Below, piece after piece: positions 4,170 to 23,053 of a stretch of DNA of 64,000 nt. The DNA lies in assembly GCF_964204865.1 (NCBI RefSeq), contig NC_135260.1, positions 8,184,001 through 8,248,000 on the forward strand, written 5' to 3'. The position numbers and the translations under genes are program-made. Each line of letters opens with the position of its first letter. The first letter of the stretch is position 1. The stretch is from Styela clava. Its lineage: Eukaryota. A model generated the notes under the pieces. It worked only from the letters and a program-made list of their open reading frames with translations, made no database searches and was not told the origin of the DNA.

Positions 4170-7100
4170 GTGTCAAACTACACCGAACCGGCTGCAGTTA
4201 CGCTCTGTTTACCAAACTTGCTTCAGCCATAATAGGAGAGATTGTAAGCAACAAATTCAGTAAAGCTGACGTAATTAAAGTCAGCAGACTGTAGCAAGGT
4301 GAACGAGATAAATTGCGAGTGCAGACCAGCGTGGTATCGTAGCCAAATGTAAATGACGCGAATACAACCATTTTTGGAGAAATCATTGAATGTGTTGATC
4401 CTGCATATTTATAAAAAGTGTTGTAATAGTCATGGAAATAAATCTGCAAATGCTGACTGCGAAAGAGAGAAAAATGTGGTAGAATACAATGGGGGGAGGT
4501 TTAATAGAATTCTCCCAATGTCCACAGCAAGCGCGATTTGTGAACAACCAGTATGTCTTATTGGGTGATTCTTGTGTGACTCCCCCACGTCGATTGCTAA
4601 ATTGTTGTAAACATGTTGATCCAATTCTGGAGATGTCAGATATCCCGTTAACCAATATGCTGTAACTTATTCATTTTCAATCAGTCCCGCGAGGTTGATC
4701 CCCCATTAGGTATGCCAGTCTGCACGTTTCTCTTTCAAATATTATTTGCTAGACTCTAATTGTTCTACGTATTGAATTGGGTATTATTAGTTGGCTATAA
4801 TCGTTGGTCGAATCATGACTACAGTCACGCTAACTAGGTCATTACGCAAATAGTAGAAATATATGCTTGGTTGGCAAAAGCGCCTAAATAACAAATGGAA
4901 AATGTACATAGGTATTGCCTTTAATAAATATAATATAAAAATGGAATATATATAAATATAATAAGTTCATATAAATAGGTTTTGCATTGGTTAAACTTTA
5001 AAGGAGCTACAAACCAAACAATCATTACACCAGAATCTTTTTTAAGCGTAACTAGTCGTTGATTAGTTATTCCCTGTACCACAATGTAACTTTTGGAACA
5101 GACCAGATTAAACCGGCTACAGCTGCCGATGTTGACCAAACTTGTTTCTTCCATAATAGGAAGTGTACCTAACGTCAGACAAGTCCGTGGGCCTTGAGAA
5201 GGTAAACGAGAGACTATGCGAGTACAGTCCATCGCAAGGTAGTAAGTCAATTGTAAATACGCAAAGCAAAAAAAAAATAACTATTTAAGCCTTCAAGGAC
5301 ACGCATTTGCAATCGACACAGAAAATTGATCTGCAAATGTTTACAAAGAAAGAGAGGGAAAATGGTAGACAACAATGAGGGAAAGATTCGATGAGGGTAA
5401 AATTATTTCCATGTTTGCAGATAGCGACTCGTCAACAACTGTTTATCGTGGGGATTTTTGTGCCACTCCCCCGTGTTGATAAATTTATTGAAAACATGTT
5501 GATTGATTCTTTCAGACGATGTCAGGAAATCACGTTTACCGATATATCGCAACTAATTTGTGCTTATCCAGTCCCGAAAAAAGTTAATTCCCCGAGGGGT
5601 GCCTGGTGTACCTGTTTGCACGTTTCTGTGATAAAACCATTTTTTAGAATTTAATCGTTATAAATATCGACTCAGACGACTCTCCAAGATTTATCTACTC
5701 GAATTAGAAAGATCAAATTACTGGCAACACTGATTATACATATATTTGGTATTATGGTTTGGCTAAAATCGTTTATCGAATCATGACTGCAGTCATGTCG
5801 GCCTATAATCGATTATTACGCAACTATTAGAAACATATCTTTGCTTGTCGAAAAACGCTTTATTTTTAACTAATCAAAAAAATGAACAAAATTCTTTTTT
5901 CGCGGGTCTAGCTTTATCTCCTCGAATTCGCATCGGTTTAGGAGCTCCAAAGCACAAAAATCATTATACGTTTTACCGAAATCTCTTATATTTTTGTAGT
6001 GAACAACATTTCAACTTAGCATTTAGCATTTCGTAATAAACAGTTACAAATAGGAATGTACATTTTAGACTTTCCAATCGATTCCGATTATGAGAATATG
6101 AATCATTTGTGTGTTTCGGGCCTGTATTCAAGTTTGCTCTACTCCGTGTTTAGATTCGATTTTATTGTTAAGTTACCAAAAAAGTTCGGGAATTTTGTCT
6201 AATCGTTTGTTTTTGCTCGTGTCTATTGAATTCATTGCATTGCATTCCAACATACTTTGAACTGACCCTGGCGTGCATTTCCACAGTCTTGAGCACATGC
6301 GTCATCACGTTCTGCGGGAACAAGTAAATCTAAAACCCAGTGACGCATGCAAAAGAGAGGATAGGGATTTTCAGAATATTCCCACCCTCCTTCCGACTGA
6401 ATCAAAAGTATTGCTTTCGTCACGGGAAGTCCGCATGATGTGACGTATACTATACTGCGACTATATTATGCACAAAAAGTTTTCGTTCAGAAAGCGTTCT
6501 ATAATAGATAGCTATAATACGTATGTGTAATTTTGACTGTAAAAAAAAAAACAGATTCCCAAAGCCGTTTCACTGATAAAGCATTATGCACGTGGGGTCA
6601 TATCATATATATGTTAGACTAGTCCTAAAGTAATATCCGAACACCCTTATGAAATTCATGTCTTCACATTTTAATGCAGTAATAATACTGGATAACCTCT
6701 GGAGAATGTATCTGTACTCCGATTAGGTCGTATACTTTTCTTTCTTCCTACTTTTTCGTTTCAACTAATTTTCGACAAGTTGAATAGTATATTGAGTACG
6801 TTCATGGAATAAAAGACAAAATATTTGAGTTATGATGTTCGTTTGATATTTGTCAATGTGAGTTGGAGATATTACTTTGGACGCGTGGTGGACCTATGAA
6901 TCGTTTGGTTATTATGTTGTTGTTGTCTTTGGTATTTTCTTCGTATTGTTATGAATGAAATCGCCTTTCTATTTAGCTACTGGACCAATTGCTTTAAAAT
7001 TTAATTTTTAGTGGTTAAATATTGTATTTTCACACGAAGGCTATTACTTTTTCGTGTCCATATATTTGAGCATAACCCTTTTGTTGTTATTAGCACCCTT

Positions 7101-9050
7101 CGACCTTTTAAATTAACGTATCACACAACGTAGCAAAGCTTTTAGTCATATTAGGAAATATAAATGAGCATCAAACAAAGCATATCTTATGTTAGAAAGG
7201 TCAGTAGACCCTAAGAAAGTAAACGAGAGAATATGCGAGTACAGTCCAGCGCAGTGCCATAGCAAATAAATTTTAGATACATCAAAAATATAACTACTCT
7301 TACACACACGCAAAAACTGATCTGCAAATATTGACTACGAAAGAGAAAGGATTAGACCAGTGTCTCCCAACCCGAGTCCGCGGTCCCAAATGAGTCCGCA
7401 GAGCGTTTGAATGAGTGCGCAACGAGCCAAAAATTCACTGCGGGCCGCAAACGTATTTGTGAAACTTTCTTAACTATCAGCCAAGTTACGATTTACGTTA
7501 GAATTTACATAAAACATAAAAAGCCAATTTCTTCACATAACATTAATCGTGTCAATAATTACCGGTTACTGAGTATGGCTGGGCATATAATCGTATATTC
7601 AACTATTAGAATAGCAATTTACTTATCGAAAAGTAGGTAACACGTGACGCGACAGGTCACTTGCGAGTCGCTTAATCAAACGATTAGTTTTCACAACTCT
7701 CTTGCGGATTTTCGACGAAAACAAGAGGCGGCACACGTGTCGATAGATACCTAAGTGGTGTTTGAACAACGAGAAAGAAATTTTTTCTGGTAGGTGTAAA
7801 TGGTGGTAACCCAAATTTTCTAAATTGAAAAGCGGTCCGCGACCGATTGAAGACGCATTTTTAGATATTGCAAATCGCAAAACTTCGAGTGCTACCGTAG
7901 TATAAGTAAATTGTTAGCGACAATTTTAAGGCGATGAATAAGTATTTTTCATTTACTAGTATACTTTAAATATATTTTTAATAAATACTAAATTGAGTTG
8001 TACATTCTGTAAATTTAAAGCAGATAGTAGGATTTTTCTAACGGCGATAACAAATTCGCAAGATTGCAAAAAATATGTATCAAAGCTGAATATAATCGGG
8101 CAATATATTCTCTCATTATTATATTCGCAGATGGCCGTGGAATTTTGGATATTTGAATATTTATCGGAAAATCCCTCTTATTGTAGTGCGCAACATTTCA
8201 ACTACATTTAGTATTTCTTAATAAACAGTTACAAATAGTAATGTTAATTTCGGCCTTTACAACCGATTTTGTTTGAATTGATCTCCAAACAAATTCATGC
8301 AGTGATTCTGAGTGATTATTTGTGTTTTACTGGTATGTATTTAGGTTTGTCCTACTTCGCGTTTAGCTTTGATTTTATTGTTAAGTTACCAAAAAATGTT
8401 TGGGAAATTTTTTCTGCTGTTTTTATTTTTAATACGTGTCTATTGAATTTATTGCATTCCATCGCAACGGACTTTGAACTAATCTGACGTACAATTCCAC
8501 TCACGTGCGTGCATGCGTCATGAACCTCTTCGACAACAAGAGCAGCTCAAACCCATTGACGCGTGCAGAAGTGAGAATAGGGTTCAGGGATTTCAGAATA
8601 CTTCCACCCTCTTTCTTACTGAATCAAAATTACTATTTTCGTCACGGAAAATCCGCTTGTTGTGACGTATACTGCGACTATCGATTCATTCAACCTACAT
8701 ACTAACGCCTATTATATACAAAAAGTTTTCGTTTAGACTATGTATTAAGGATAGGTGTACGTATATGCAATTTTGATTGAACAAAAAAACAATTGACAGA
8801 TTCACAGCTTCCAATGTGCTGTTACACAAATAATACATTGTACAGCTGGGGTAATACCATTTAGCCAAACACGAACTACGTCTAATTTTAAAATTAGCTT
8901 ATATAGATGTAATGCAGTAGCAATGCAGAATTGTGTCAGGTGGAATGCACCTCTACTCAGATTGCGTTAACCTGGTTTCCATTCTACTACTTTTTCGTCT
9001 AAAATTATTTTAGGCTAATTTGGCAATAGATTCAGTGCATTCATAGATGA
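4170..9050 (+). repeat. Degenerate direct-repeat array: module A (~4170-4890, ~5100-5870, partial ~7220-7350) and module B (~5965-6830, ~8165-9050)
   Basis: accggctgcag..accaaacttgcttcagccataatagg (~4187) matches accggctacag..accaaacttgtttcttccataatagg (~5112); ttgtagtgaacaacatttcaact..taataaacagttacaaatag (~5994) matches ttgtagtgcgcaacatttcaact..taataaacagttacaaatag (~8181). Boundaries are approximate. Confidence 0.8.
7358..7855. mobile_element. hAT-like non-autonomous element, one end decayed
   Basis: Begins cagtgtctcccaacc with gtccgcgg subterminal motifs; gcggtccgcgacc near the other end. It interrupts the third module A copy. No TSD confirmed. Confidence 0.55.
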
Positions 9051-15850: not shown

Positions 15851-18082
15851 GATAAAAACCTTGCATTATATTAGCATTGCACGGCAGGAAGCTACTCCGA
15901 GGTTACACTATCCCCACCATATAGGCGTTGGAGAATAGTTAAAGAAATGCCAGCGCCTTCAGTCTCTTAAGGGCTGCATAAGAACTTCTTTTGTTCTATG
16001 TGTCAAATGTAGGCTTACTATACGTCTCGGTTTATCCAGGCATTTCCGGTTTTGACAAGCTGTCCCGCCCGGTAGACATGAACTGAACTGAGCAAGAACT
16101 GGTGTATTGTGTCATAGTTAGTATATGTTCATTGCAACGTTAACTTATCTGGCCATCAATATGATAAATAAAAAGCGTAAAAATACCAGGGACAATAATG
16201 TTTTCCTCAAACTAAATAAAAACTAAAAAGAGCTATCACGAGACCGGTATAGCATGTGCGGTTCATGTACTTTGAAACTGAATTCAATACCATGCCGTTA
16301 CCATGGCTTCGCCCGTTTGCGTAGAAAGCCTTTTTGTCAACACGTATAAATATTTAATAATTACACTGTTCGAGTAACAGAGCTGAAATTATTCTGCGAT
16401 TTTGTCATTATGAGTATCAACGTCTATTTCAGTGAAAATCTTATATATATTTCACCGTATTTTTTCGAGTTTAAAGTTTTTTTCCTCGTATTAGATACCA
16501 TTTTTCATTTTCTTAAAAAGTTTGCGTCAAAATTTATTTGAGTATATATAACTAGGAATCTAGCTGGAATATTGGAAATGATGTTGTAATATAAAATAAA
16601 AACTCGATTTAAACCTATGTGTATAAAAGCTCGTTGAACTTGCAAAAAAATAGTTAAGCTATCCACCAAGAATTAATAAGTTTCGTAAACGTGCATTATA
16701 CGTCGTATGACATGATGGTTATACACTCTGTCGTAATATTATCACTCAAGTGTAAAATGTTTTCTCCCTACAATATTGTGCAATATAATAATCTACATTT
16801 TACCTGTTATACAATCCCCCGGGTAAAGCCCTGATATTATACTGATTTCGATAGCAATCTTGATAATGACTAATTTGTGGTCTCTGATTCATTCTTAGTT
16901 CAATATATCTTATTTGCAGATGGAGTTACGATCTATTAACTTGGTTTCAATAAATAACATTTAGGGTAAATTAGGAGTGATGTTTGTTTGGTTTGGCTAT
17001 TAATCACACCACGAGACAATGTTCGTCGCAAAATCAATATATATATATATATTATTCACGTAGTTGTTAAAATGTTTCGGATGTATGACAAATGAATCAC
17101 TCAAGGTAAAGGTAGCCCACGTCATTTTATTGGATTGTTTTAGTAAGTGATAAAGAATGAATGTACATGTTATTAGTATCGTGTGCATTATAAATTATTC
17201 AAGAATTTCGCGGTTTTCTTACCTGTGAACGTCCCCATTAAATACTGTCCGGGCAAGTAAATTTCAACTCATTTTATCAACTTACATCTTCTATATGTAA
17301 CTCGACATTCCAGATATTGCTGATTCTAATATATAATATTGAATTCACAGAACATTTTACATAAATTACAAAGATCTTTACCGCAACTGAGCAAATTCAA
17401 AACATCTAACCCCCATGTCCATGACCTCAGAAATTTGATAACATTACACTCGAGAAGAATATTGGGAAACATACCTAAATTAAACTTGAATTTAGTGAAT
17501 TAGTCTGATAAATCTGGTTGCGAATATTTGAAGATATCTTGTATATAATTAAATGATCAGACAAATAACTTTATATTTCCATGTCAAGATCATGTTCTAC
17601 AATACATTTATCTTTTCTAAATATGATTAAAGATTCTCATTGTTCTTGTCCTAAACTAAAATTGAAAAAAGGTACATCAGAGAATATGAACAAACATAGC
17701 AAAACCAGCTTTACATTTTTAGTAATCACATGTTTCGACATTATTTGTTACAATTCCTGATTTATTTTACATTTGTATTTACGTTACTGCCTCAAAGTTC
17801 AAATTAAAATTCATAATCAGATTACGAAGTAGATAGGTGTTCGATAACCTATAGAGCATCAAGTATAAGTATATAAAGAAGTGAGAATGGGAGATAATAA
17901 TTAAGCAGCAGTACATATTACAAATTAATATCCTTAAACATAAAAATTAACTTGCATCATTTCAACAGCAGAAATATAATCAGATTTACATTTATGTATG
18001 TGGATATTTCAAACGTTTTGGCACAAATTACACATATCTTGTCTGGATACATTGCACAATACATAAATGGATAGGGATGCAT

Positions 18083-20985
18083 CTACTGTATAACAACATC
18101 TATTTTTGGCGGTTGCTCGGGTAGGGGCTCGTAACCATCCTCGAAGTCAGCACATTCAGAAAGATGCATCGCAAGCTCATCCCATCCTTCACCGATATCA
18201 GATAAAGTATCCATCAATCTTTTAAACTGCTCTGATGACACGTGTGCGTCTCTTGAATACACTACAATTTTGTTACGAACTGTAACATAAATGAATTATT
18301 TCACACATAGTGGAAAATATTAACTTAGTAATATACCACTGAAGCATATCTCACATGTAGTAATGCTTAAAAGTAATACTGAAAATAAAAACAGCAAGAC
18401 AGTAAACCTAATATTTTTTCTGAACAATATCTTCATAGTGAAGTTTTTGCAAGAATATGATTGAATAAAATAATAAAGAATTCTAATTGACTCACCGTTT
18501 TCTTGCATCAACATAATCATAAAATTATCGTAGTCAGTGATCATTACATATTTTCCATTGAACATGTCTTCGATAAACCTGATTTCTAGAAAATAAAAAA
18601 TTTATCGGCGGGGTAGCTTCTCGTTAACAGGAGATGAACACCAGTTTGTCACAGTATTGCATAGTTTTTTTAATAAATTAACTGAATATTATATATGTTT
18701 AAATACGATCACATTGTCTCGTGCATGCGGTATGTTTTTTCCAGTTCCAGTTTACACGTGGAAAAAAATTTCGCCCAGTTCAGTCGATATTGTATGTCAA
18801 ATAGCCCAATGAAACGGTGGATAATATTTAAAGGTTTATTATTATGGTTTAATAGAATTGGTAATCTTAATCCGTATTGGAGGAGCAATCTGAGCGTCCA
18901 TTTAATTTTGTTTTCGACTGTACCAATAATGAATTTCTCGTTATTCACTGCAATATAATATTATATATAGTAATCAAAAAATAATAATAGAGACACGTAC
19001 GACGTTTGCTTTCTCTATCTCTCTCACCAAAACTGCCATCCCCGCTAAATGTTGTCCACCTGGTACCAGAGCCGGACCCATAATTCGGTCCGTCGTCAAC
19101 TTGATAGCCAGGTCCGGTATTTGGAATAAAGCTTTGCTCTGAACCATAATTCGACATTCCATTGCCCGAATAGAACCCGCCATTGTCCAGGTTTCCATAA
19201 CCATCTCCAGACCCATATCTAGGGCCAGAATTGTAGCCAGGTCCATCGCCAGTCATGTAACCCATCATGTCCCCGAGTCCGCCTAGGAGGTCGTATCCCG
19301 AACCGTAATTTCCCTCGGACCCGTCATCACTGCCTTTTTCGTAATATGGCATAATCCTAGGTTCAGAAGCCGGTCCTGCATATTCATAATTGGACCCTTG
19401 TCTTCCGTATCCTGTCGTACATAAAAATGGGTTGAAATAATCAATAACAATTCCTGGCGTGAATACAACGAATTGACTAACTTCAGAGCCGAACTTTTAA
19501 GCCGGTTCGCTATTTTATAGGGTACAGACTTCACAAGTTGAAATGAAGCACTAATAATCATCGAATTTATTTTGTTCGGAAAAAGTGGAATTGGCCAAAA
19601 GTATTGCCATTCTATTTTTTACGTGCATTCTAGCATTTACGACGTAGATTAAAATATTGAAAAGTTATGCAAAAAACAATATGTTTGTATGATTTACCTT
19701 GGAAGTCTTCCCATTCATATTTACATCCATACTTCTTACCACGAATTCGCATTTTACGATAAGATTTTTGCCTACAAAATACAACGAACTTGAATTTGAG
19801 TTTACTACGACAACTAGTGGATTAACTGTCTTATACAAATCACATTTTAACCCGGTACACAAACCGCCTAGGATACCCTTCGTTTGGACAATCGCGACCA
19901 ATTGATATCCAATCAATTAAGATTTGCTTAATCTTCCAATATATGTACAATAGAACGATACAAGTAAAAACAAATGACCTCATTGATCTTACTTCCCTGA
20001 AAAAGTGCTATGTGTTTGTTGCTCATCATTATATATATATATTATATAGTCATCGCACTACATTCTGTACTAAAGGAGATTATTGTACCGTTTTTCTTAC
20101 CCAATATTGTATTCAATTATTTCGACTTCCATCATTTCATTCCCTCCCTTAATTTTATTCATTCCGAAACATTTTCCGTCGTCAGGATATTCCAAAGATG
20201 ACATAATTTGGTACCATCGGCCTGAAGCCTGCAGAGAATGAGAAAATAAGGACCGAGTTTTGGTAAACACGATGGATTACTTTGTTTCAAACAGAACATC
20301 TTTCCCAGAAATAAAAACAAACAATTTTTGCAGTACGTTGCGATATCGAAGTCTTTTTCAAGTAATGAGCCGAAAATGCCCAAAACCGAGAAAATACTTC
20401 ACTCATCACTTTAAAGTGTGTTATCATCTGTTCTACACAAATAAAAATTTGGCGTAGTTCTTGCACAAAAAAAGCTTAGTTATTCTTTCTGAAGGTGAGT
20501 CCGGTTCGAAAGTTAGTGTGAGCTAATAATTTTTATAAATACTGATCACCAACTGATACTGATTATACCAACGGTTTTTATCTGATTTGTCGAATTTCCA
20601 CAGCGCTTATATGCATTTCGAAATATTTTAAATCTATTAATTTTACATTAAACGTCCGATGCAAATCTATCAGTACATTGTCTAATATTATGCGTGATAT
20701 TATATAAGTTTAATGAAAAGCATCGCATTTATCGGATTTTTACCTTTTCACATTATTTTCTAACGATAATATCAAATTCAAACTGTTTTTTTGAGATACC
20801 TTGTCCCAATCGATTTCCTCCTGGGATGGCAAAGTACATTTCCTTTTATTTGCAGAGTTACCTGGGGGCTCAACTTTAGGTGGAGATGAAAATTCATTGG
20901 TGTAAACAGGTATAGGTGTGACGAAATTGATTTCAAATATTACAAAAACTACTGCAAGCATCTCAAATCGTTTCATGCGTGCCAT
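18083..20985 (-). CDS. Secreted lipocalin (calycin fold) with a large Gly/Tyr/Ser/Asp-rich insertion; 6 exons, about 361 aa
   Basis: Exons on the minus strand: 20800-20985, 20101-20228, 19698-19771, 19001-19411, 18496-18585, 18083-18279, all phases compatible. Hydrophobic signal-like N-terminus; lipocalin SCR1 IDWDKASGRWYQI, SCR2 VMITDYDNF, SCR3 VVYSRD; C-terminal Cys. Confidence 0.85.
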
Positions 20986-21058
20986 AATTCTCTCCGTTCA
21001 GAAAACACTGGAACCTTCCTAAACTAAACTAAATGAATCTTTGGAATACATCCACGAC

Positions 21059-21064
21059 TTTATA
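21059..21064 (-). promoter_or_regulatory. Putative TATA box of the lipocalin gene
   Basis: TATAAA on the minus strand about 75 bp upstream of the ATG at 20985. Confidence 0.4.
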
Positions 21065-23053
21065 CATCTCGCTATTATAATTACTATGGAACTTTGGTCA
21101 AGCACCGTAGATATAATATCCATATCCCATGGAGGATATCCGTCATTGAAATGCAATATGGAGTTTGAACTATTTTAACGAATAATTCTGATGATCCCGT
21201 TATATGTCATTTTTAGGACAGAATTACGAACTTACGCATTTCTAATATCTCCTCCCCAAAAACTGTTTTTTTAGCTACCAACTGACCATACATTACATTC
21301 AATTAAATTATTTTTTTCCTTACCCACTTTTTACGAATTTCATACTTAATTTAGGGAATAACCCTGAAATAATTTTGAAATTCGAATTGATTATTTTAAC
21401 TAAATTCATCGTTCACATATATTGATAGAATTGTGTAGTGTATTGTACGTATCAAAATCGAACTGCAAACCAATGAAAGCTACAACGACTTCCCCCAACA
21501 TTCGTGTAGAATTTCACGCTGATGCAATTGCGGTAATGCTTGGTGTTGCAAAACCAGTTCGGTCTTCATACAATCCTCCTGATTCAATTTTTCTTTGTAA
21601 ATGGCAGAGCTGTCATACCATCCCAATACGCATTTACCACAGTTCTTATGCTTAATGTAATTTTTGGCCGGAAATATGAACCGCATATGTATATATATTA
21701 CTTGTATTGCTTACTGAATATAAGTTGAATCATTGAACATATGTAAAACAAATATTCAAAGCGGGATAAATGTAAGATCCAAGCTAAGACTGCGATACAA
21801 ATGGATTTCCGGTTGCGATGACCTTTGGTATTCTGTGATCATCCAGCAAAGAAGTAATAATGTTTACAGTTGAAATGAGCCTCAATCATAAATGAGGATT
21901 TCCTGTTAGAACATTTTTGTAAAGTTATAACATCATGATACAATTAAAGATAATTAAAGTGATAAATTAACATCTTTATATTTTCCACTCGAATTATATT
22001 TTATGGAATATTCAGTGGAGCGAACATGTTATTCAAGTTCCAACTGGACGATCTCGTATTGGTTTAGACTGCCTTGAACAAGTAAAATCCTAATTTTTAT
22101 TGAAAAAAAAAAAAAAAAATTGCTCAACGTTATTATACTTAATCGGGAATACAGACTTCCCTTACAACCATGGGTGCCGAATACAAAATTTCGGATTGTA
22201 AAACATTTACGGTGATAATTTAAGATGGACACAAATCTAGCTTATTTAAGGTTTCTAGTCGAACTCTTTGGTTTTATTCACATTCAGAAATACGTACCTG
22301 TAACGCCCTTCATTTTCGATTTATTACGTAAGCAGACTGAGGTAATCAGGGTATTGATGAGAACTTCCGGTACCGTGGCCATGACAAAGATTGTAGTCAC
22401 AATACAATATTCTACTAAAAAAAGCAGTCAGATCAAATAGGATTTGTAACACCCAATCATATCCACGTACCAGGCGATCATTTTGTTACTCGCAAAACTG
22501 GCCCTTAATCAGTGCTTACTGTAAGCCCGATAACTATTGAACCCCGCCCTATCATGTAGTTGCATTGAATACTATATGATTCTAGTTATTTTGTCAGTTT
22601 TTCTATATATCATTCTCGTCCCATTATTTTTGTCACGCATTTCACAATGCAGCCTGGATTATTGATTGTCGCAATTTATATCTGTGCACTTACAAGTTTG
22701 AGGTTTGACATGGCAGGTTGATGTTAGGCCGGGGGCGATAACACTGATCGTGGTCCTAACTTTTCGTTCCAGAATTTCATATTTTTGTTTTCATAATCTG
22801 TGGTTTCATTGGCTTAAACTTCATCAGCTGCTGATTGCAGTCTAAGATTCGAGGAACAAACGAATTTAAAAAAATAACTTCGTCAATTATAGCAGAGAGA
22901 ATATGCTTTCAAATTTAGATAATGATACCCCGGACGCCCAATCGGACCTTGGTTTTAATCGATCTGTAAGCAAACATCCTTAGTATCGACCTCATTTTCG
23001 CATATTTGTTACAGAAAAACGTAAAATTTTAATTTATTTGTGCTATTATAAAA

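What the first reader, a model, noticed from the sequence alone, without database searches (positions are those of the whole stretch)
19001..19411. Lipocalin split by a symmetric 137-codon Gly/Tyr-rich cassette exon
Seen: exon 4 is 411 nt, phase 1 to phase 1, and encodes low-complexity GY/GP-x-Y-GSG repeats (GPGYNSGPRYGSGDGYG, GPNYGSG). It lies between SCR1 and SCR2, so inside the barrel-coding region, and ends in a dibasic ESKR. Skipping it keeps the frame and gives a ~224-aa conventional lipocalin precursor. Known: lipocalins are usually compact, and Gly/Tyr-rich low-complexity segments occur in secreted adhesive, cuticle and cross-linked (DOPA/dityrosine) proteins. Inference: a switchable carrier with a long isoform that is matrix-anchored, cross-linked or phase-separating, or one that releases a Tyr-rich peptide by convertase cleavage. 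This is the best candidate here for an undescribed protein type.
Basis: partly seen in the sequence, partly recalled or inferred. Interest (0 to 1): 0.8.

Follow-up and report, generated by a model that had tools for sequence, protein, structure and literature searches.

The report
Sea-squirt lipocalin with ballooned Gly/Tyr loop exon
A secreted carrier protein (lipocalin) of the sea squirt Styela clava carries a 137-residue floppy glycine/tyrosine-rich segment, made by a small loop exon that has grown seven-fold in this one gene and is always spliced in, so it is an oddly built family member rather than a switchable isoform.

Summary
Window 19411..19001 (minus strand) is a real 411-nt, phase 1/1 coding exon. 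It is exon 4 of Styela clava LOC120347966, which NCBI lists as "uncharacterized protein".

Spliced contigs from 4 of 4 runs (3 studies) contain the exon, and none skips it. All three RefSeq isoforms (361, 356 and 349 aa) also include it. They differ only in three in-frame acceptors at its 5' edge. The "switchable cassette" reading is therefore not supported.

The flanking exons are lipocalin-like:
- Pfam Lipocalin_2 scores 26.3 bits against a cut-off of 24.
- All 20 PDB hits of a family profile are lipocalins.
- The 3-D models are weak (pLDDT 35 and 48.5).

Paralogs in the same genome carry a conserved 57-nt phase 1/1 exon at the same place (8 genes in 7 of 11 loci). Exon 4 is thus a family exon enlarged about seven-fold, not a foreign insert.

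The Gly/Ser/Tyr-rich peptide has no relative among 1.84 billion proteins and is single-copy in the genome. It is predicted to be disordered, is highly polymorphic, and has unusually evenly spaced aromatic residues. A tethering or cross-linking role is inference only.

This scan had already noted the lipocalin family on other pieces of this genome, but not this exon.

The parts
20800..20985 (-). Exon 1 coding part. ATG at 20985. Encodes a hydrophobic N-terminus (probable signal peptide) and the KCTLP..IDWDK segment. Ends in phase 0.
   Evidence: Sequence. Joint 20227|20799 (cut +1) in 3 of 4 runs. Matches P0004. No signal-peptide predictor was run.
20101..20228 (-). Exon 2, 128 nt, phase 0 to 2. 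Carries the GRWYQI motif (lipocalin SCR1) and the conserved Cys82.
   Evidence: Joint 19770|20100 (cut +1) in 4 of 4 runs. W67 and C82 are invariant in alignment A1.
19698..19771 (-). Exon 3, 74 nt, phase 2 to 1. Encodes a beta-hairpin-like segment, QKSYRKMRIRGKKYGCKYEWEDFQ.
   Evidence: Joints. Paralogs have an 83-nt exon here.
19001..19411 (-). Exon 4, 411 nt, phase 1 to 1. Encodes a 137-residue acidic Gly/Ser/Tyr-rich low-complexity segment. This is the finding.
19375..19411 (-). The 5' edge of exon 4, with three in-frame acceptors. Exon starts at 19411, 19396 and 19375 give isoforms X1 (361 aa), X2 (356 aa) and X3 (349 aa).
   Evidence: Joint 19410|19697 (cut +1) in runs X1, X4 and X6. Joint 19374|19697 (cut +1) in run X3. 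Isoform sequences.
18496..18585 (-). Exon 5, 90 nt, phase 1 to 1. Encodes QIRFIEDMFNGKYVMITDYDNF..., which holds lipocalin SCR2 (TDYxxF).
   Evidence: Joints 18585|19001 and 18279|18496 in 4 of 4 runs.
18083..18279 (-). Exon 6 coding part with the TAG stop. Holds YSR (SCR3), a helix region, the IGEGW motif and the conserved Cys339. The 3' UTR continues below 18083.
   Evidence: The Pfam Lipocalin_2 match covers residues 246-330. Contigs run on to 17800.

Best explanation
SHOWN.
- The stretch is exon 4 of Styela clava LOC120347966, an expressed six-exon gene for a probably secreted lipocalin-like protein. The gene belongs to a large Styela family of ApoD/bilin-binding-protein-like genes.
- The exon is included in every assembled transcript seen. 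Its only variation is the choice among three in-frame acceptors.
- It stands where paralogs have a conserved 57-nt, phase 1/1 exon, between the exon-3 hairpin and the strand that precedes the TDY strand.
- In this one gene that exon is 411 nt. It encodes an acidic Gly/Ser/Tyr-rich segment (G 25%, S 12%, Y 11%, net charge -9). The segment has no detectable relative anywhere and is predicted to be disordered. Between alleles it changes residues far more often than the barrel exons do.

INFERRED.
- By colinearity with solved lipocalins and by strand parity, the segment is a giant loop between strands E and F, at the open (ligand-entry) end of the barrel.
- Its evenly spaced tyrosines would act as multivalent weak 'stickers'. 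These would hold the carrier in a matrix or condensate (tunic, blood-cell granule or secretion) and could be oxidatively cross-linked. The barrel would keep its ligand-binding role.

I put about 0.85 on the anatomy and evolutionary part and about 0.3 on the tether or cross-link function.
For: Transcription and splicing:
- Joints ex6-ex5 and ex5-ex4 occur in 4 of 4 runs. Joint ex4-ex3 at 19411 occurs in 3 of 4, and at 19375 in 1 of 4. No skipping joint was seen.
- NCBI isoforms X1, X2, X3 and the older model all contain the exon.

Lipocalin identity:
- Pfam Lipocalin_2 scores 26.3 bits against a cut-off of 24 on P0004.
- The profile of P0004 plus 14 intronless paralogs hits 20 PDB sequences, all lipocalins. 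The best is bilin-binding protein at E 1.1e-5, with N-half and C-half stretches in the right order.
- In the VIA search the top Z is 5.2, to a lipocalin, and 16 of 50 rows are lipocalins.

Family exon:
- A 57-nt phase 1/1 exon with AG/GT borders lies between exon-3-like and exon-5-like pieces in 8 genes at 7 of 11 distinct paralog loci.
- Intronless paralogs carry about 22 extra residues at the same place.

Orphan, disordered and fast-changing:
- The peptide is a single hit in its own genome.
- The word search gave 0 hits from 402 candidates.
- Only the gene's own product and 2 unrelated repeat proteins scored among 1.84e9 proteins.
- The insert has pLDDT under 50 in both models.
- 8 of 9 listed exon-4 differences change a residue, while exons 2, 3 and 5 show none. 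The older allele has 10 residue differences inside the insert.

Aromatic patterning: the gaps between aromatic residues are more even than in 10,000 shuffles, P = 0.0063.
Against: - No fold was confirmed. AF2 reached pLDDT 35 on a single sequence and 48.5 with a shallow, partly misaligned alignment. Foldseek gave no match at E <= 0.001. All VIA Z values lie under the tool's own noise line of about 8.
- The E-F placement rests on length and parity reasoning, not on a model. A D-E (closed-end) placement is not excluded.
- Contigs cannot exclude a minor skipped isoform.
- Homology between the 411-nt exon and the 57-nt exon is positional only. BLASTP aligns just the last 2-5 residues, in 7 of 14 intronless paralogs.
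- Near-neutral polymorphism fits a tolerated, functionless loop equally well.
- Even aromatic spacing could be a relic of decayed short repeats. The [GSNP][YF][GSN] motif count is not significant (P = 0.094).
- Tissue, localisation, modification and ligand are all unknown.
Confidence: 0.6

Rival explanations
1. Tolerated bloat. A family loop exon expanded, by slippage of Gly/Tyr codons or a shifted splice site, in a loop where length is not constrained. The segment is a passive, near-neutrally drifting disordered loop with no function of its own, and the protein works as an ordinary lipocalin.
For: - 8 of 9 listed exon-4 differences are non-synonymous.
- There are 10 residue differences between the two alleles in 137 residues.
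- Three interchangeable acceptors are in use.
- No relative exists anywhere.
- Paralogs vary at the same site.
Against: - The frame is open over 137 codons in both alleles and in transcripts from three studies.
- Aromatic spacing is more even than chance, P = 0.0063.
- The composition is strongly skewed rather than random.
- No DNA-level tandem repeat is left, so the expansion is not very recent.
Confidence: 0.27
2. Exon 4 is a regulated cassette exon, so the gene switches between a compact 224-aa lipocalin and a long matrix-bound form.
For: - The exon is symmetric (phase 1/1), so skipping keeps the frame.
- Its donor, GTC|gtacgt, departs from the consensus as I recall it.
- Assembled contigs drop rare variants (tool note).
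Against: - 0 of 4 runs (3 studies) show a joint from exon 5 to exon 3, while all 4 show exon 5 joined to exon 4.
- 0 of 4 NCBI protein models lack the exon.
- The low word shares of some runs come from a missing exon 1, not a missing exon 4. Run X4's contig holds exon 4.
- Paralogs keep an exon at this place.
Confidence: 0.07
3. Pro-protein. The dibasic ESKR at the end of exon 4 is cut by a convertase. This would give a two-chain lipocalin held together by the Cys82-Cys339 bond, or release a Tyr-rich peptide.
For: - KR directly precedes the exon-5-coded strand and is present in both alleles.
- C82 and C339 are invariant in the family alignment.
- An engineered split lipocalin (6ukl) appears among the structure matches. 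From recall, this shows that lipocalin barrels can work in two pieces.
Against: - There is no Arg at P4, so it is not a furin-type site.
- The corresponding residues in intronless paralogs are KQ, RQ or EQ, not dibasic.
- No second dibasic site frames a peptide at the start of the exon.
- There are no protein data.
Confidence: 0.06

Closest known systems
ApoD / bilin-binding protein / insecticyanin-type lipocalins (Pfam PF08212 Lipocalin_2, PF00061)
   Same: It has the GxW, TDYxx[YF] and (Y)SR motifs in the right order, an N-terminal hydrophobic leader, and a Cys after the first loop paired in position with a C-terminal Cys. Pfam Lipocalin_2 is above its cut-off. The best PDB profile hits are bilin-binding protein, DigA16 and ApoD.
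   Different: A 137-residue low-complexity segment lies inside the barrel-coding region. The family also carries an extra exon (57 nt in paralogs) that adds about 19-22 residues not present in ApoD or BBP, judged by length comparison from recalled sequences. The second ApoD-type disulfide position (a Cys after TDY) is missing in this member.
The Styela clava lipocalin-like family found elsewhere by this scan (s1-819797, s1-825803) and
   Same: The six-exon plan and the exon phases (0, 2, 1, 1, 1) are the same. It shares the conserved KCTLP..(D/N)W, GxW(Y/F), TDYENY and R..P.AED.LR..N...G.GW...L..S.C motifs.
   Different: Exon 4 is 411 nt instead of 57 nt and has an unrelated Gly/Tyr-rich composition. 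This member, unlike 4 of 4 intronless paralogs tested, still reaches the Pfam lipocalin cut-off.
Anticalins and the hypervariable open-end loops of lipocalins
   Same: The variation is concentrated in a loop between strands near the calyx mouth. The family varies at this very site.
   Different: Engineered and natural loop variation is a few residues (recalled). Here the loop is about 150 residues and disordered, and its open-end placement is inferred, not shown.
High-glycine/tyrosine keratin-associated proteins (NCBI's earlier automatic name for this gene was 'keratin-associated protein 6-2-like')
   Same: Gly/Tyr/Ser-rich composition with GYG and YGSG motifs.
   Different: There is no detectable homology: 0 hits, only unrelated repeat proteins, and no Pfam family. 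The segment is acidic, has no Cys, and is embedded in a lipocalin.
Tyr/DOPA-rich marine adhesive and tunic proteins (mussel foot protein 3 type; ascidian DOPA/TOPA peptides)
   Same: A secreted protein of a sessile marine animal with a Gly/Asn/Tyr-rich low-complexity segment. Ascidian tunic adhesion has long been linked to DOPA/TOPA peptides (review PMC12817120, passages read).
   Different: Those proteins are basic rather than acidic (recalled). No modification, tissue or adhesive role is known for this gene, and none of the ascidian adhesive proteins named in that review is a lipocalin.
Prion-like / FUS-type low-complexity domains ('stickers and spacers')
   Same: The segment is G/S/Y-rich with evenly spaced aromatic residues (P = 0.0063).
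   Different: It is extracellular, about 20% of its residues are charged, and it is inserted in a loop of a folded domain rather than forming a tail. Phase separation is untested.
AMBP (alpha-1-microglobulin/bikunin precursor), a lipocalin joined to another module
   Same: A lipocalin gene that encodes extra non-lipocalin sequence and is processed at basic sites. The fusion is mentioned in PMC8420045 (passages read).
   Different: In AMBP the extra module is a folded domain appended at the C-terminus. Here the extra sequence is a disordered segment inside the barrel-coding region.

Membership tests
Lipocalin (calycin) family, ApoD/BBP-like | SCR1 G-x-W at the start of strand A | tested here: met
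   G65-R-W67 in P0004. W67 is invariant in A1.
Lipocalin (calycin) family, ApoD/BBP-like | SCR2 T-D-Y-x-x-Y | tested here: met
   T283-D-Y-D-N-F, with F in place of the last Y. D284 and N287 are invariant in A1. It aligns to the TDY of sandercyanin.
Lipocalin (calycin) family, ApoD/BBP-like | SCR3 Arg at the end of strand H | tested here: met
   Y-S-R305. It aligns with the SR of sandercyanin and BBP.
Lipocalin (calycin) family, ApoD/BBP-like | Score above the curated Pfam cut-off | tested here: met
   PF08212 scores 26.3 bits against 24, over residues 246-330 only. PF00061 scores 12.4 against 23, so it is not met. Single exons gave no lipocalin hit in 0 of 6 pieces.
Lipocalin (calycin) family, ApoD/BBP-like | Eight-stranded antiparallel barrel plus C-terminal helix formed by both halves | tested here: inconclusive
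   AF2 gave pLDDT 35 and 48.5. Strands 82-125 and 267-293 and helix 300-313 reach 62-82. Foldseek found nothing at E <= 0.001. The best VIA Z is 5.2, to a lipocalin, and 16 of 50 rows are lipocalins, but all lie below the noise line. The sequence profile hits both halves of BBP in order.
Lipocalin (calycin) family, ApoD/BBP-like | Secretion signal and disulfide linking strand B to the C-terminus | tested here: inconclusive
   The hydrophobic N-terminus was judged by eye only. C82 and C339 are invariant in A1 and positionally match ApoD Cys41 in the alignment. No bond can be shown.
Lipocalin (calycin) family, ApoD/BBP-like | Binds a small hydrophobic ligand in the calyx | not testable with these tools
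   No assay is available.
Cassette (alternatively skipped) exon | Both the inclusion and the skipping form are found in transcripts | tested here: not met
   Inclusion was seen in 4 of 4 runs and skipping in 0 of 4. 0 of 4 NCBI models lack the exon. The data are contigs only, so rare forms could be missed.
Styela six-exon lipocalin-like family | Exon plan with phases 0, 2, 1, 1, 1 and a short phase 1/1 exon 4 | tested here: met
   The phases are the same in the window gene and in L018 and L021. An exon-4 homologue was found in 8 genes at 7 of 11 loci. In the window gene the exon is 411 nt rather than 57 nt.
High-Gly/Tyr keratin-associated proteins | Sequence homology to KAP6-type proteins | tested here: not met
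   No protein of 75-238 aa scored. There were no KAP hits and no Pfam family.
DOPA / dityrosine cross-linked structural proteins | Modified or cross-linked tyrosines in the mature protein | not testable with these tools
   This needs mass spectrometry.

The most novel reading that the evidence does not exclude
In a sea-squirt-specific family of roughly a hundred lipocalins, a dedicated mini-exon encodes a loop at the mouth of the binding pocket. In this gene that exon would have been turned into a 137-residue tyrosine 'sticker' segment, making a ligand carrier that is built into, or condenses within, an extracellular matrix such as the tunic. It could do so through Tyr-Tyr contacts or DOPA/dityrosine cross-links. 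That would be a cargo-holding structural lipocalin, a combination not described for this fold.
Probability: 0.18. Interest if true: 0.65.

Novelty: new variant of a known kind. Interest (0 to 1): 0.4.

Why it matters
If the long loop is functional, it would show that a rigid lipocalin barrel can carry a large disordered, tyrosine-rich segment within its barrel-coding region and still be made at high level. That is of interest for protein engineering of anticalins and split lipocalins, and for tunic and adhesive biology in a major fouling species.

It is also a clean natural example of how a family-specific mini-exon can balloon into a low-complexity segment, with soft alternative splice edges. 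If the loop is merely tolerated, the finding is an ordinary lineage-specific oddity in an uncharacterized gene.

Tried and rejected
- **Pfam on single exons.** No lipocalin hit in 0 of 6 pieces. They are too short, so this says nothing.
- **Pfam family search over the own genome.** 0 matches. The exon-by-exon search is too insensitive.
- **Word searches.** The exon-4 peptide, the whole NCBI protein (2794 candidates) and its C-terminal region (6 candidates) found only the protein itself. The length filter hides ordinary 170-195-aa lipocalins, so this does not show that relatives are absent.
- **ESM Atlas.** Closed.
- **Origin of the exon.** TRF found no tandem repeat in the exon. The DNA and protein searches of the own genome found only the exon itself. 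A recent minisatellite or transposon origin is therefore rejected.
- **Alignments for folding.** Alignment A1 put paralog strands into the insert. Cutting the paralog frames into N- and C-pieces gave a worse alignment, A3, which was not used. A2 was used although strand E is still misplaced, and this may have lowered the model's quality.
- **Foldseek** gave nothing significant.
- **Exon 3 of paralog L017.** My first attempts to find it by eye were inconclusive. They were settled later by comparison among paralogs.
- **Literature.** The searches were: Styela clava + lipocalin; lipocalin + disordered / insertion / glycine-rich; lipocalin + ascidian; tunicate + Gly / Tyr / DOPA; Styela + tunic + glycine-rich; keratin-associated protein + ascidian; lipocalin + low-complexity loop; lipocalin + tunicate + Ciona; and gene and protein identifiers. 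No paper on this gene or on a lipocalin with such a segment turned up. Sanchez et al. 2003 on lipocalin exon structure is not held, so what I say of canonical intron phases is recalled.
- **Joined model.** I used NCBI's own isoform proteins as the tools returned them.
Full report
**What is in the sequence.**
- Reading the minus strand between 21000 and 18000 gives a six-exon gene: exon 1 at 20985..20800, exon 2 at 20228..20101, exon 3 at 19771..19698, exon 4 at 19411..19001, exon 5 at 18585..18496, and exon 6 at 18279..18086 followed by TAG.
- The intron phases are 0, 2, 1, 1, 1.
- Exon 4 is 411 nt and phase 1 at both ends.
- The coding length is 224 aa without it and 361 aa with it.
- An open run of 137 codons has a chance of about 2.7e-4 at a given place in this AT-rich window. 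Only nine stop-free stretches of that length exist in all six frames.
- GC is 0.49-0.51 in the exon against 0.26-0.37 in the neighbouring introns.

**Is it transcribed, and is it a cassette?**
- The look-up of sequencing runs listed 13 runs from 4 studies. I laid four of them (X1, X3, X4, X6, from 3 studies) on window 17800-21200. All are assembled contigs.
- They are spliced exactly at the predicted borders. Exon 6 to exon 5 and exon 5 to exon 4 (18585|19001) appear in 4 of 4 runs. Exon 4 to exon 3 from 19411 appears in X1, X4 and X6.
- In X3 an acceptor 36 nt further in (exon start 19375) is used, and it stays in frame.
- No run has a joint from exon 5 to exon 3. Contigs drop rare variants, so a minor skipped form is not excluded.
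- The lower word share of X4 comes from a missing exon 1 and a retained piece of intron 1, not from a missing exon 4.

**What the databases hold.**
- The full scan of 1.84 billion representative proteins with the exon-4 peptide found three proteins at E <= 0.001. One was the gene's own product (P0001, 100% identical). The other two were long unrelated repeat proteins.
- P0001 is NCBI [quoted passage not shown].
- Its 90% cluster has four members: X1 (361 aa, identical to my model), X2 (356 aa, acceptor at 19396), X3 (349 aa, acceptor at 19375), and an older partial model named "keratin-associated protein 6-2-like" (237 aa).
- All four contain exon 4. The only isoform variation is therefore at the 5' edge of the exon.
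- The exon was already annotated, but no paper in the searched library mentions the gene. Supplements could not be read.

**Is it a lipocalin?**
- Single exons are too short for Pfam.
- On the NCBI proteins, Lipocalin_2 (PF08212) scores 26.3-26.5 bits against a cut-off of 24, over residues 246-330 of X1.
- phmmer against PDB sequences gives only weak hits (E 0.15 or worse). All are to sandercyanin (C-half) and apolipoprotein D (N-half), in colinear order.
- The own genome holds many relatives of the last exon: 81 places at E <= 10, of which 38 are at E < 0.1, the gene itself included.
- Among these are intronless copies of 217-227 aa.
- A profile of X1 plus 14 such copies (A1) hits 20 PDB sequences at E <= 10, and all are lipocalins. 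The best is bilin-binding protein at 1.1e-5, with an N-terminal and a C-terminal stretch in the right order.
- The GxW, TDYxxF and YSR motifs are present, and Cys82 and Cys339 are invariant in A1.

**Structure prediction is weak.**
- X1 alone gave pLDDT 35.
- X3 with the 27-row alignment A2 gave 48.5. Strands 82-125 and 267-293 and helix 300-313 reached 62-82, and the whole insert stayed under 50.
- Foldseek found nothing at E <= 0.001.
- The wide VIA search put a lipocalin first (4nyq, Z 5.2, rmsd 2.2, 66 aligned). 16 of the 50 listed rows are lipocalins, 6 by their titles and 10 by my recall of what the entries are. All Z values are below the level the tool calls noise.
- Lipocalin membership is therefore supported by sequence and family evidence, not by a confident fold.

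**The exon is a family exon.**
- Two earlier notes of this scan (s1-819797, s1-825803) call the Styela lipocalin genes "six-exon". I tested this.
- In paralogs on other chromosomes, an exon-3-like piece (83 nt) and the TDY exon (84 nt) are separated by a conserved 57-nt exon. It has AG and GT borders and phase 1 at both ends, and it encodes peptides of the type FLWLNEAKHNEAGSHALK.
- Examples are L018 6676-6732, L021 4090-4034 and L017 5798-5854.
- Colinear exon 3, exon 4 and exon 5 homologues were found in 8 genes at 7 of 11 distinct loci searched. They were not found at the loci of L019, L023, L024 and L011.
- The intronless copies have about 22 extra residues at the same place.
- BLASTP of X1 against them leaves X1 residues about 116-263 facing about 31 paralog residues.
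- The window's exon 4 thus occupies the place and phase of a family-wide mini-exon and is about seven times longer.
- Sequence likeness between the two is nil, except that the C-terminal BLASTP match begins 2-5 residues inside exon 4 in 7 of 14 intronless paralogs. The homology is therefore positional.
- No RNA evidence was available to me for the paralog exons.

**Nature of the segment.**
- Composition is G 25.5%, S 11.7%, Y 10.9%, D 8%, N 6.6% and P 5.8%, with no Cys and a net charge of -9.
- There is no DNA tandem repeat and no other copy in the genome.
- No protein of 75-238 aa shares it.
- The 20 aromatic residues are spaced more evenly than in 10,000 shuffles (variance 10.8 against a mean of 33.4, P = 0.0063). 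The [GSNP][YF][GSN] motif count is not significant (7 against 4.1, P = 0.094).
- Contigs of X1 and X4 differ from the window at 11 of 410 exon-4 bases and at none in exons 2, 3 and 5.
- Of the 9 differences listed, 8 change the residue.
- The older NCBI allele differs at 10 residues inside the insert. Outside it I count only one difference, A308S, as real, because the rest lie at that model's mispredicted exon edges.
- The segment is therefore a fast-changing, probably disordered region whose frame and composition are kept.

**Where it sits in the fold (inference).**
- The distance from the conserved Cys82 to the T of TDY is 64 residues without exon 4. In ApoD, BBP and sandercyanin it is about 61-62. 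The sandercyanin figure comes, and the other two are recalled.
- The alignments place strands B and C right after that Cys, and the TDY strand is F.
- Strand parity then puts the exon-3 hairpin as D and E. It puts the insert, together with the following QIRFIEDMF piece, between E and F, at the open end of the calyx.
- The A2-based model agrees in outline but at low confidence. A closed-end (D-E) placement is not excluded.

**How it most likely works.**
- Shown: an expressed lipocalin-family protein with a constitutively included, lineage-restricted, disordered Gly/Tyr-rich segment encoded by an enlarged family exon.
- Inferred: the barrel still binds a small ligand. The loop's evenly spaced tyrosines give multivalent weak contacts that hold the protein in a matrix or condensate, and they might be oxidised and cross-linked.
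- This is plausible in an animal whose tunic chemistry involves DOPA/TOPA peptides (review PMC12817120, passages read), but nothing here tests it.
- The main rival is that the loop is merely tolerated. The polymorphism data fit both readings.
- The KR ending is not dibasic in paralogs, which weakens the pro-protein idea.

**Comparison and novelty.**
- The protein is a lipocalin-family member and a member of the Styela expansion that this scan had already noted on other DNA.
- A review found a single lipocalin in Ciona by PSI-BLAST (PMC8420045, passages read), so the Styela family itself is notable.
- My searches found no description of a lipocalin with a long low-complexity segment inside the barrel-coding region.
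- I rate it a new variant of a known kind, of moderate interest. The anatomy is unusual and clearly real. The proposed switch is not there, and the function is open.

Noticed in passing
G000 C1:7104001-7142000 (loci L025-L028): A tandem cluster of at least 11 intronless open frames of 218-227 aa with signal-like starts. They belong to the same lipocalin-like family. 4 of 4 tested do not reach any Pfam lipocalin model.
   Followed up: partly
L029 (G000 C14:16546001-16556000) and L030 (C10:20924001-20934000); also L022 and L004: A 217-218-aa intronless lipocalin-like frame lies inside a repeat of at least 10 kb that is 97-98% identical between different chromosomes. One search lists about 20 places with the same score. 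A mobile element or very recent dispersed duplication may be carrying a lipocalin-like gene.
   Followed up: partly
window 20100-20473: Run X4's 1299-nt contig runs from exon 2 straight into intron 1 and lacks exon 1. This suggests a retained intron or an alternative start.
   Followed up: no
window 20799-21200 and beyond: The contigs of X1 and X3 that hold exon 1 continue unspliced to 21200 and past the end of the laid stretch. The 5' UTR is therefore longer than 215 nt, or another transcript abuts it.
   Followed up: no
G000, whole genome: The last-exon peptide finds 81 places (38 at E < 0.1). A 2021 review reports a single lipocalin in Ciona (PMC8420045). This points to a large Styela-specific expansion, also noted by earlier entries of this scan.
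   Followed up: partly
L023 (G000 C6:8497001-8507000), 187-384 and 6930-7127: Two identical copies of a paralog piece in which the TDY exon and the last exon are fused in one open frame (intron 5 lost).
   Followed up: no
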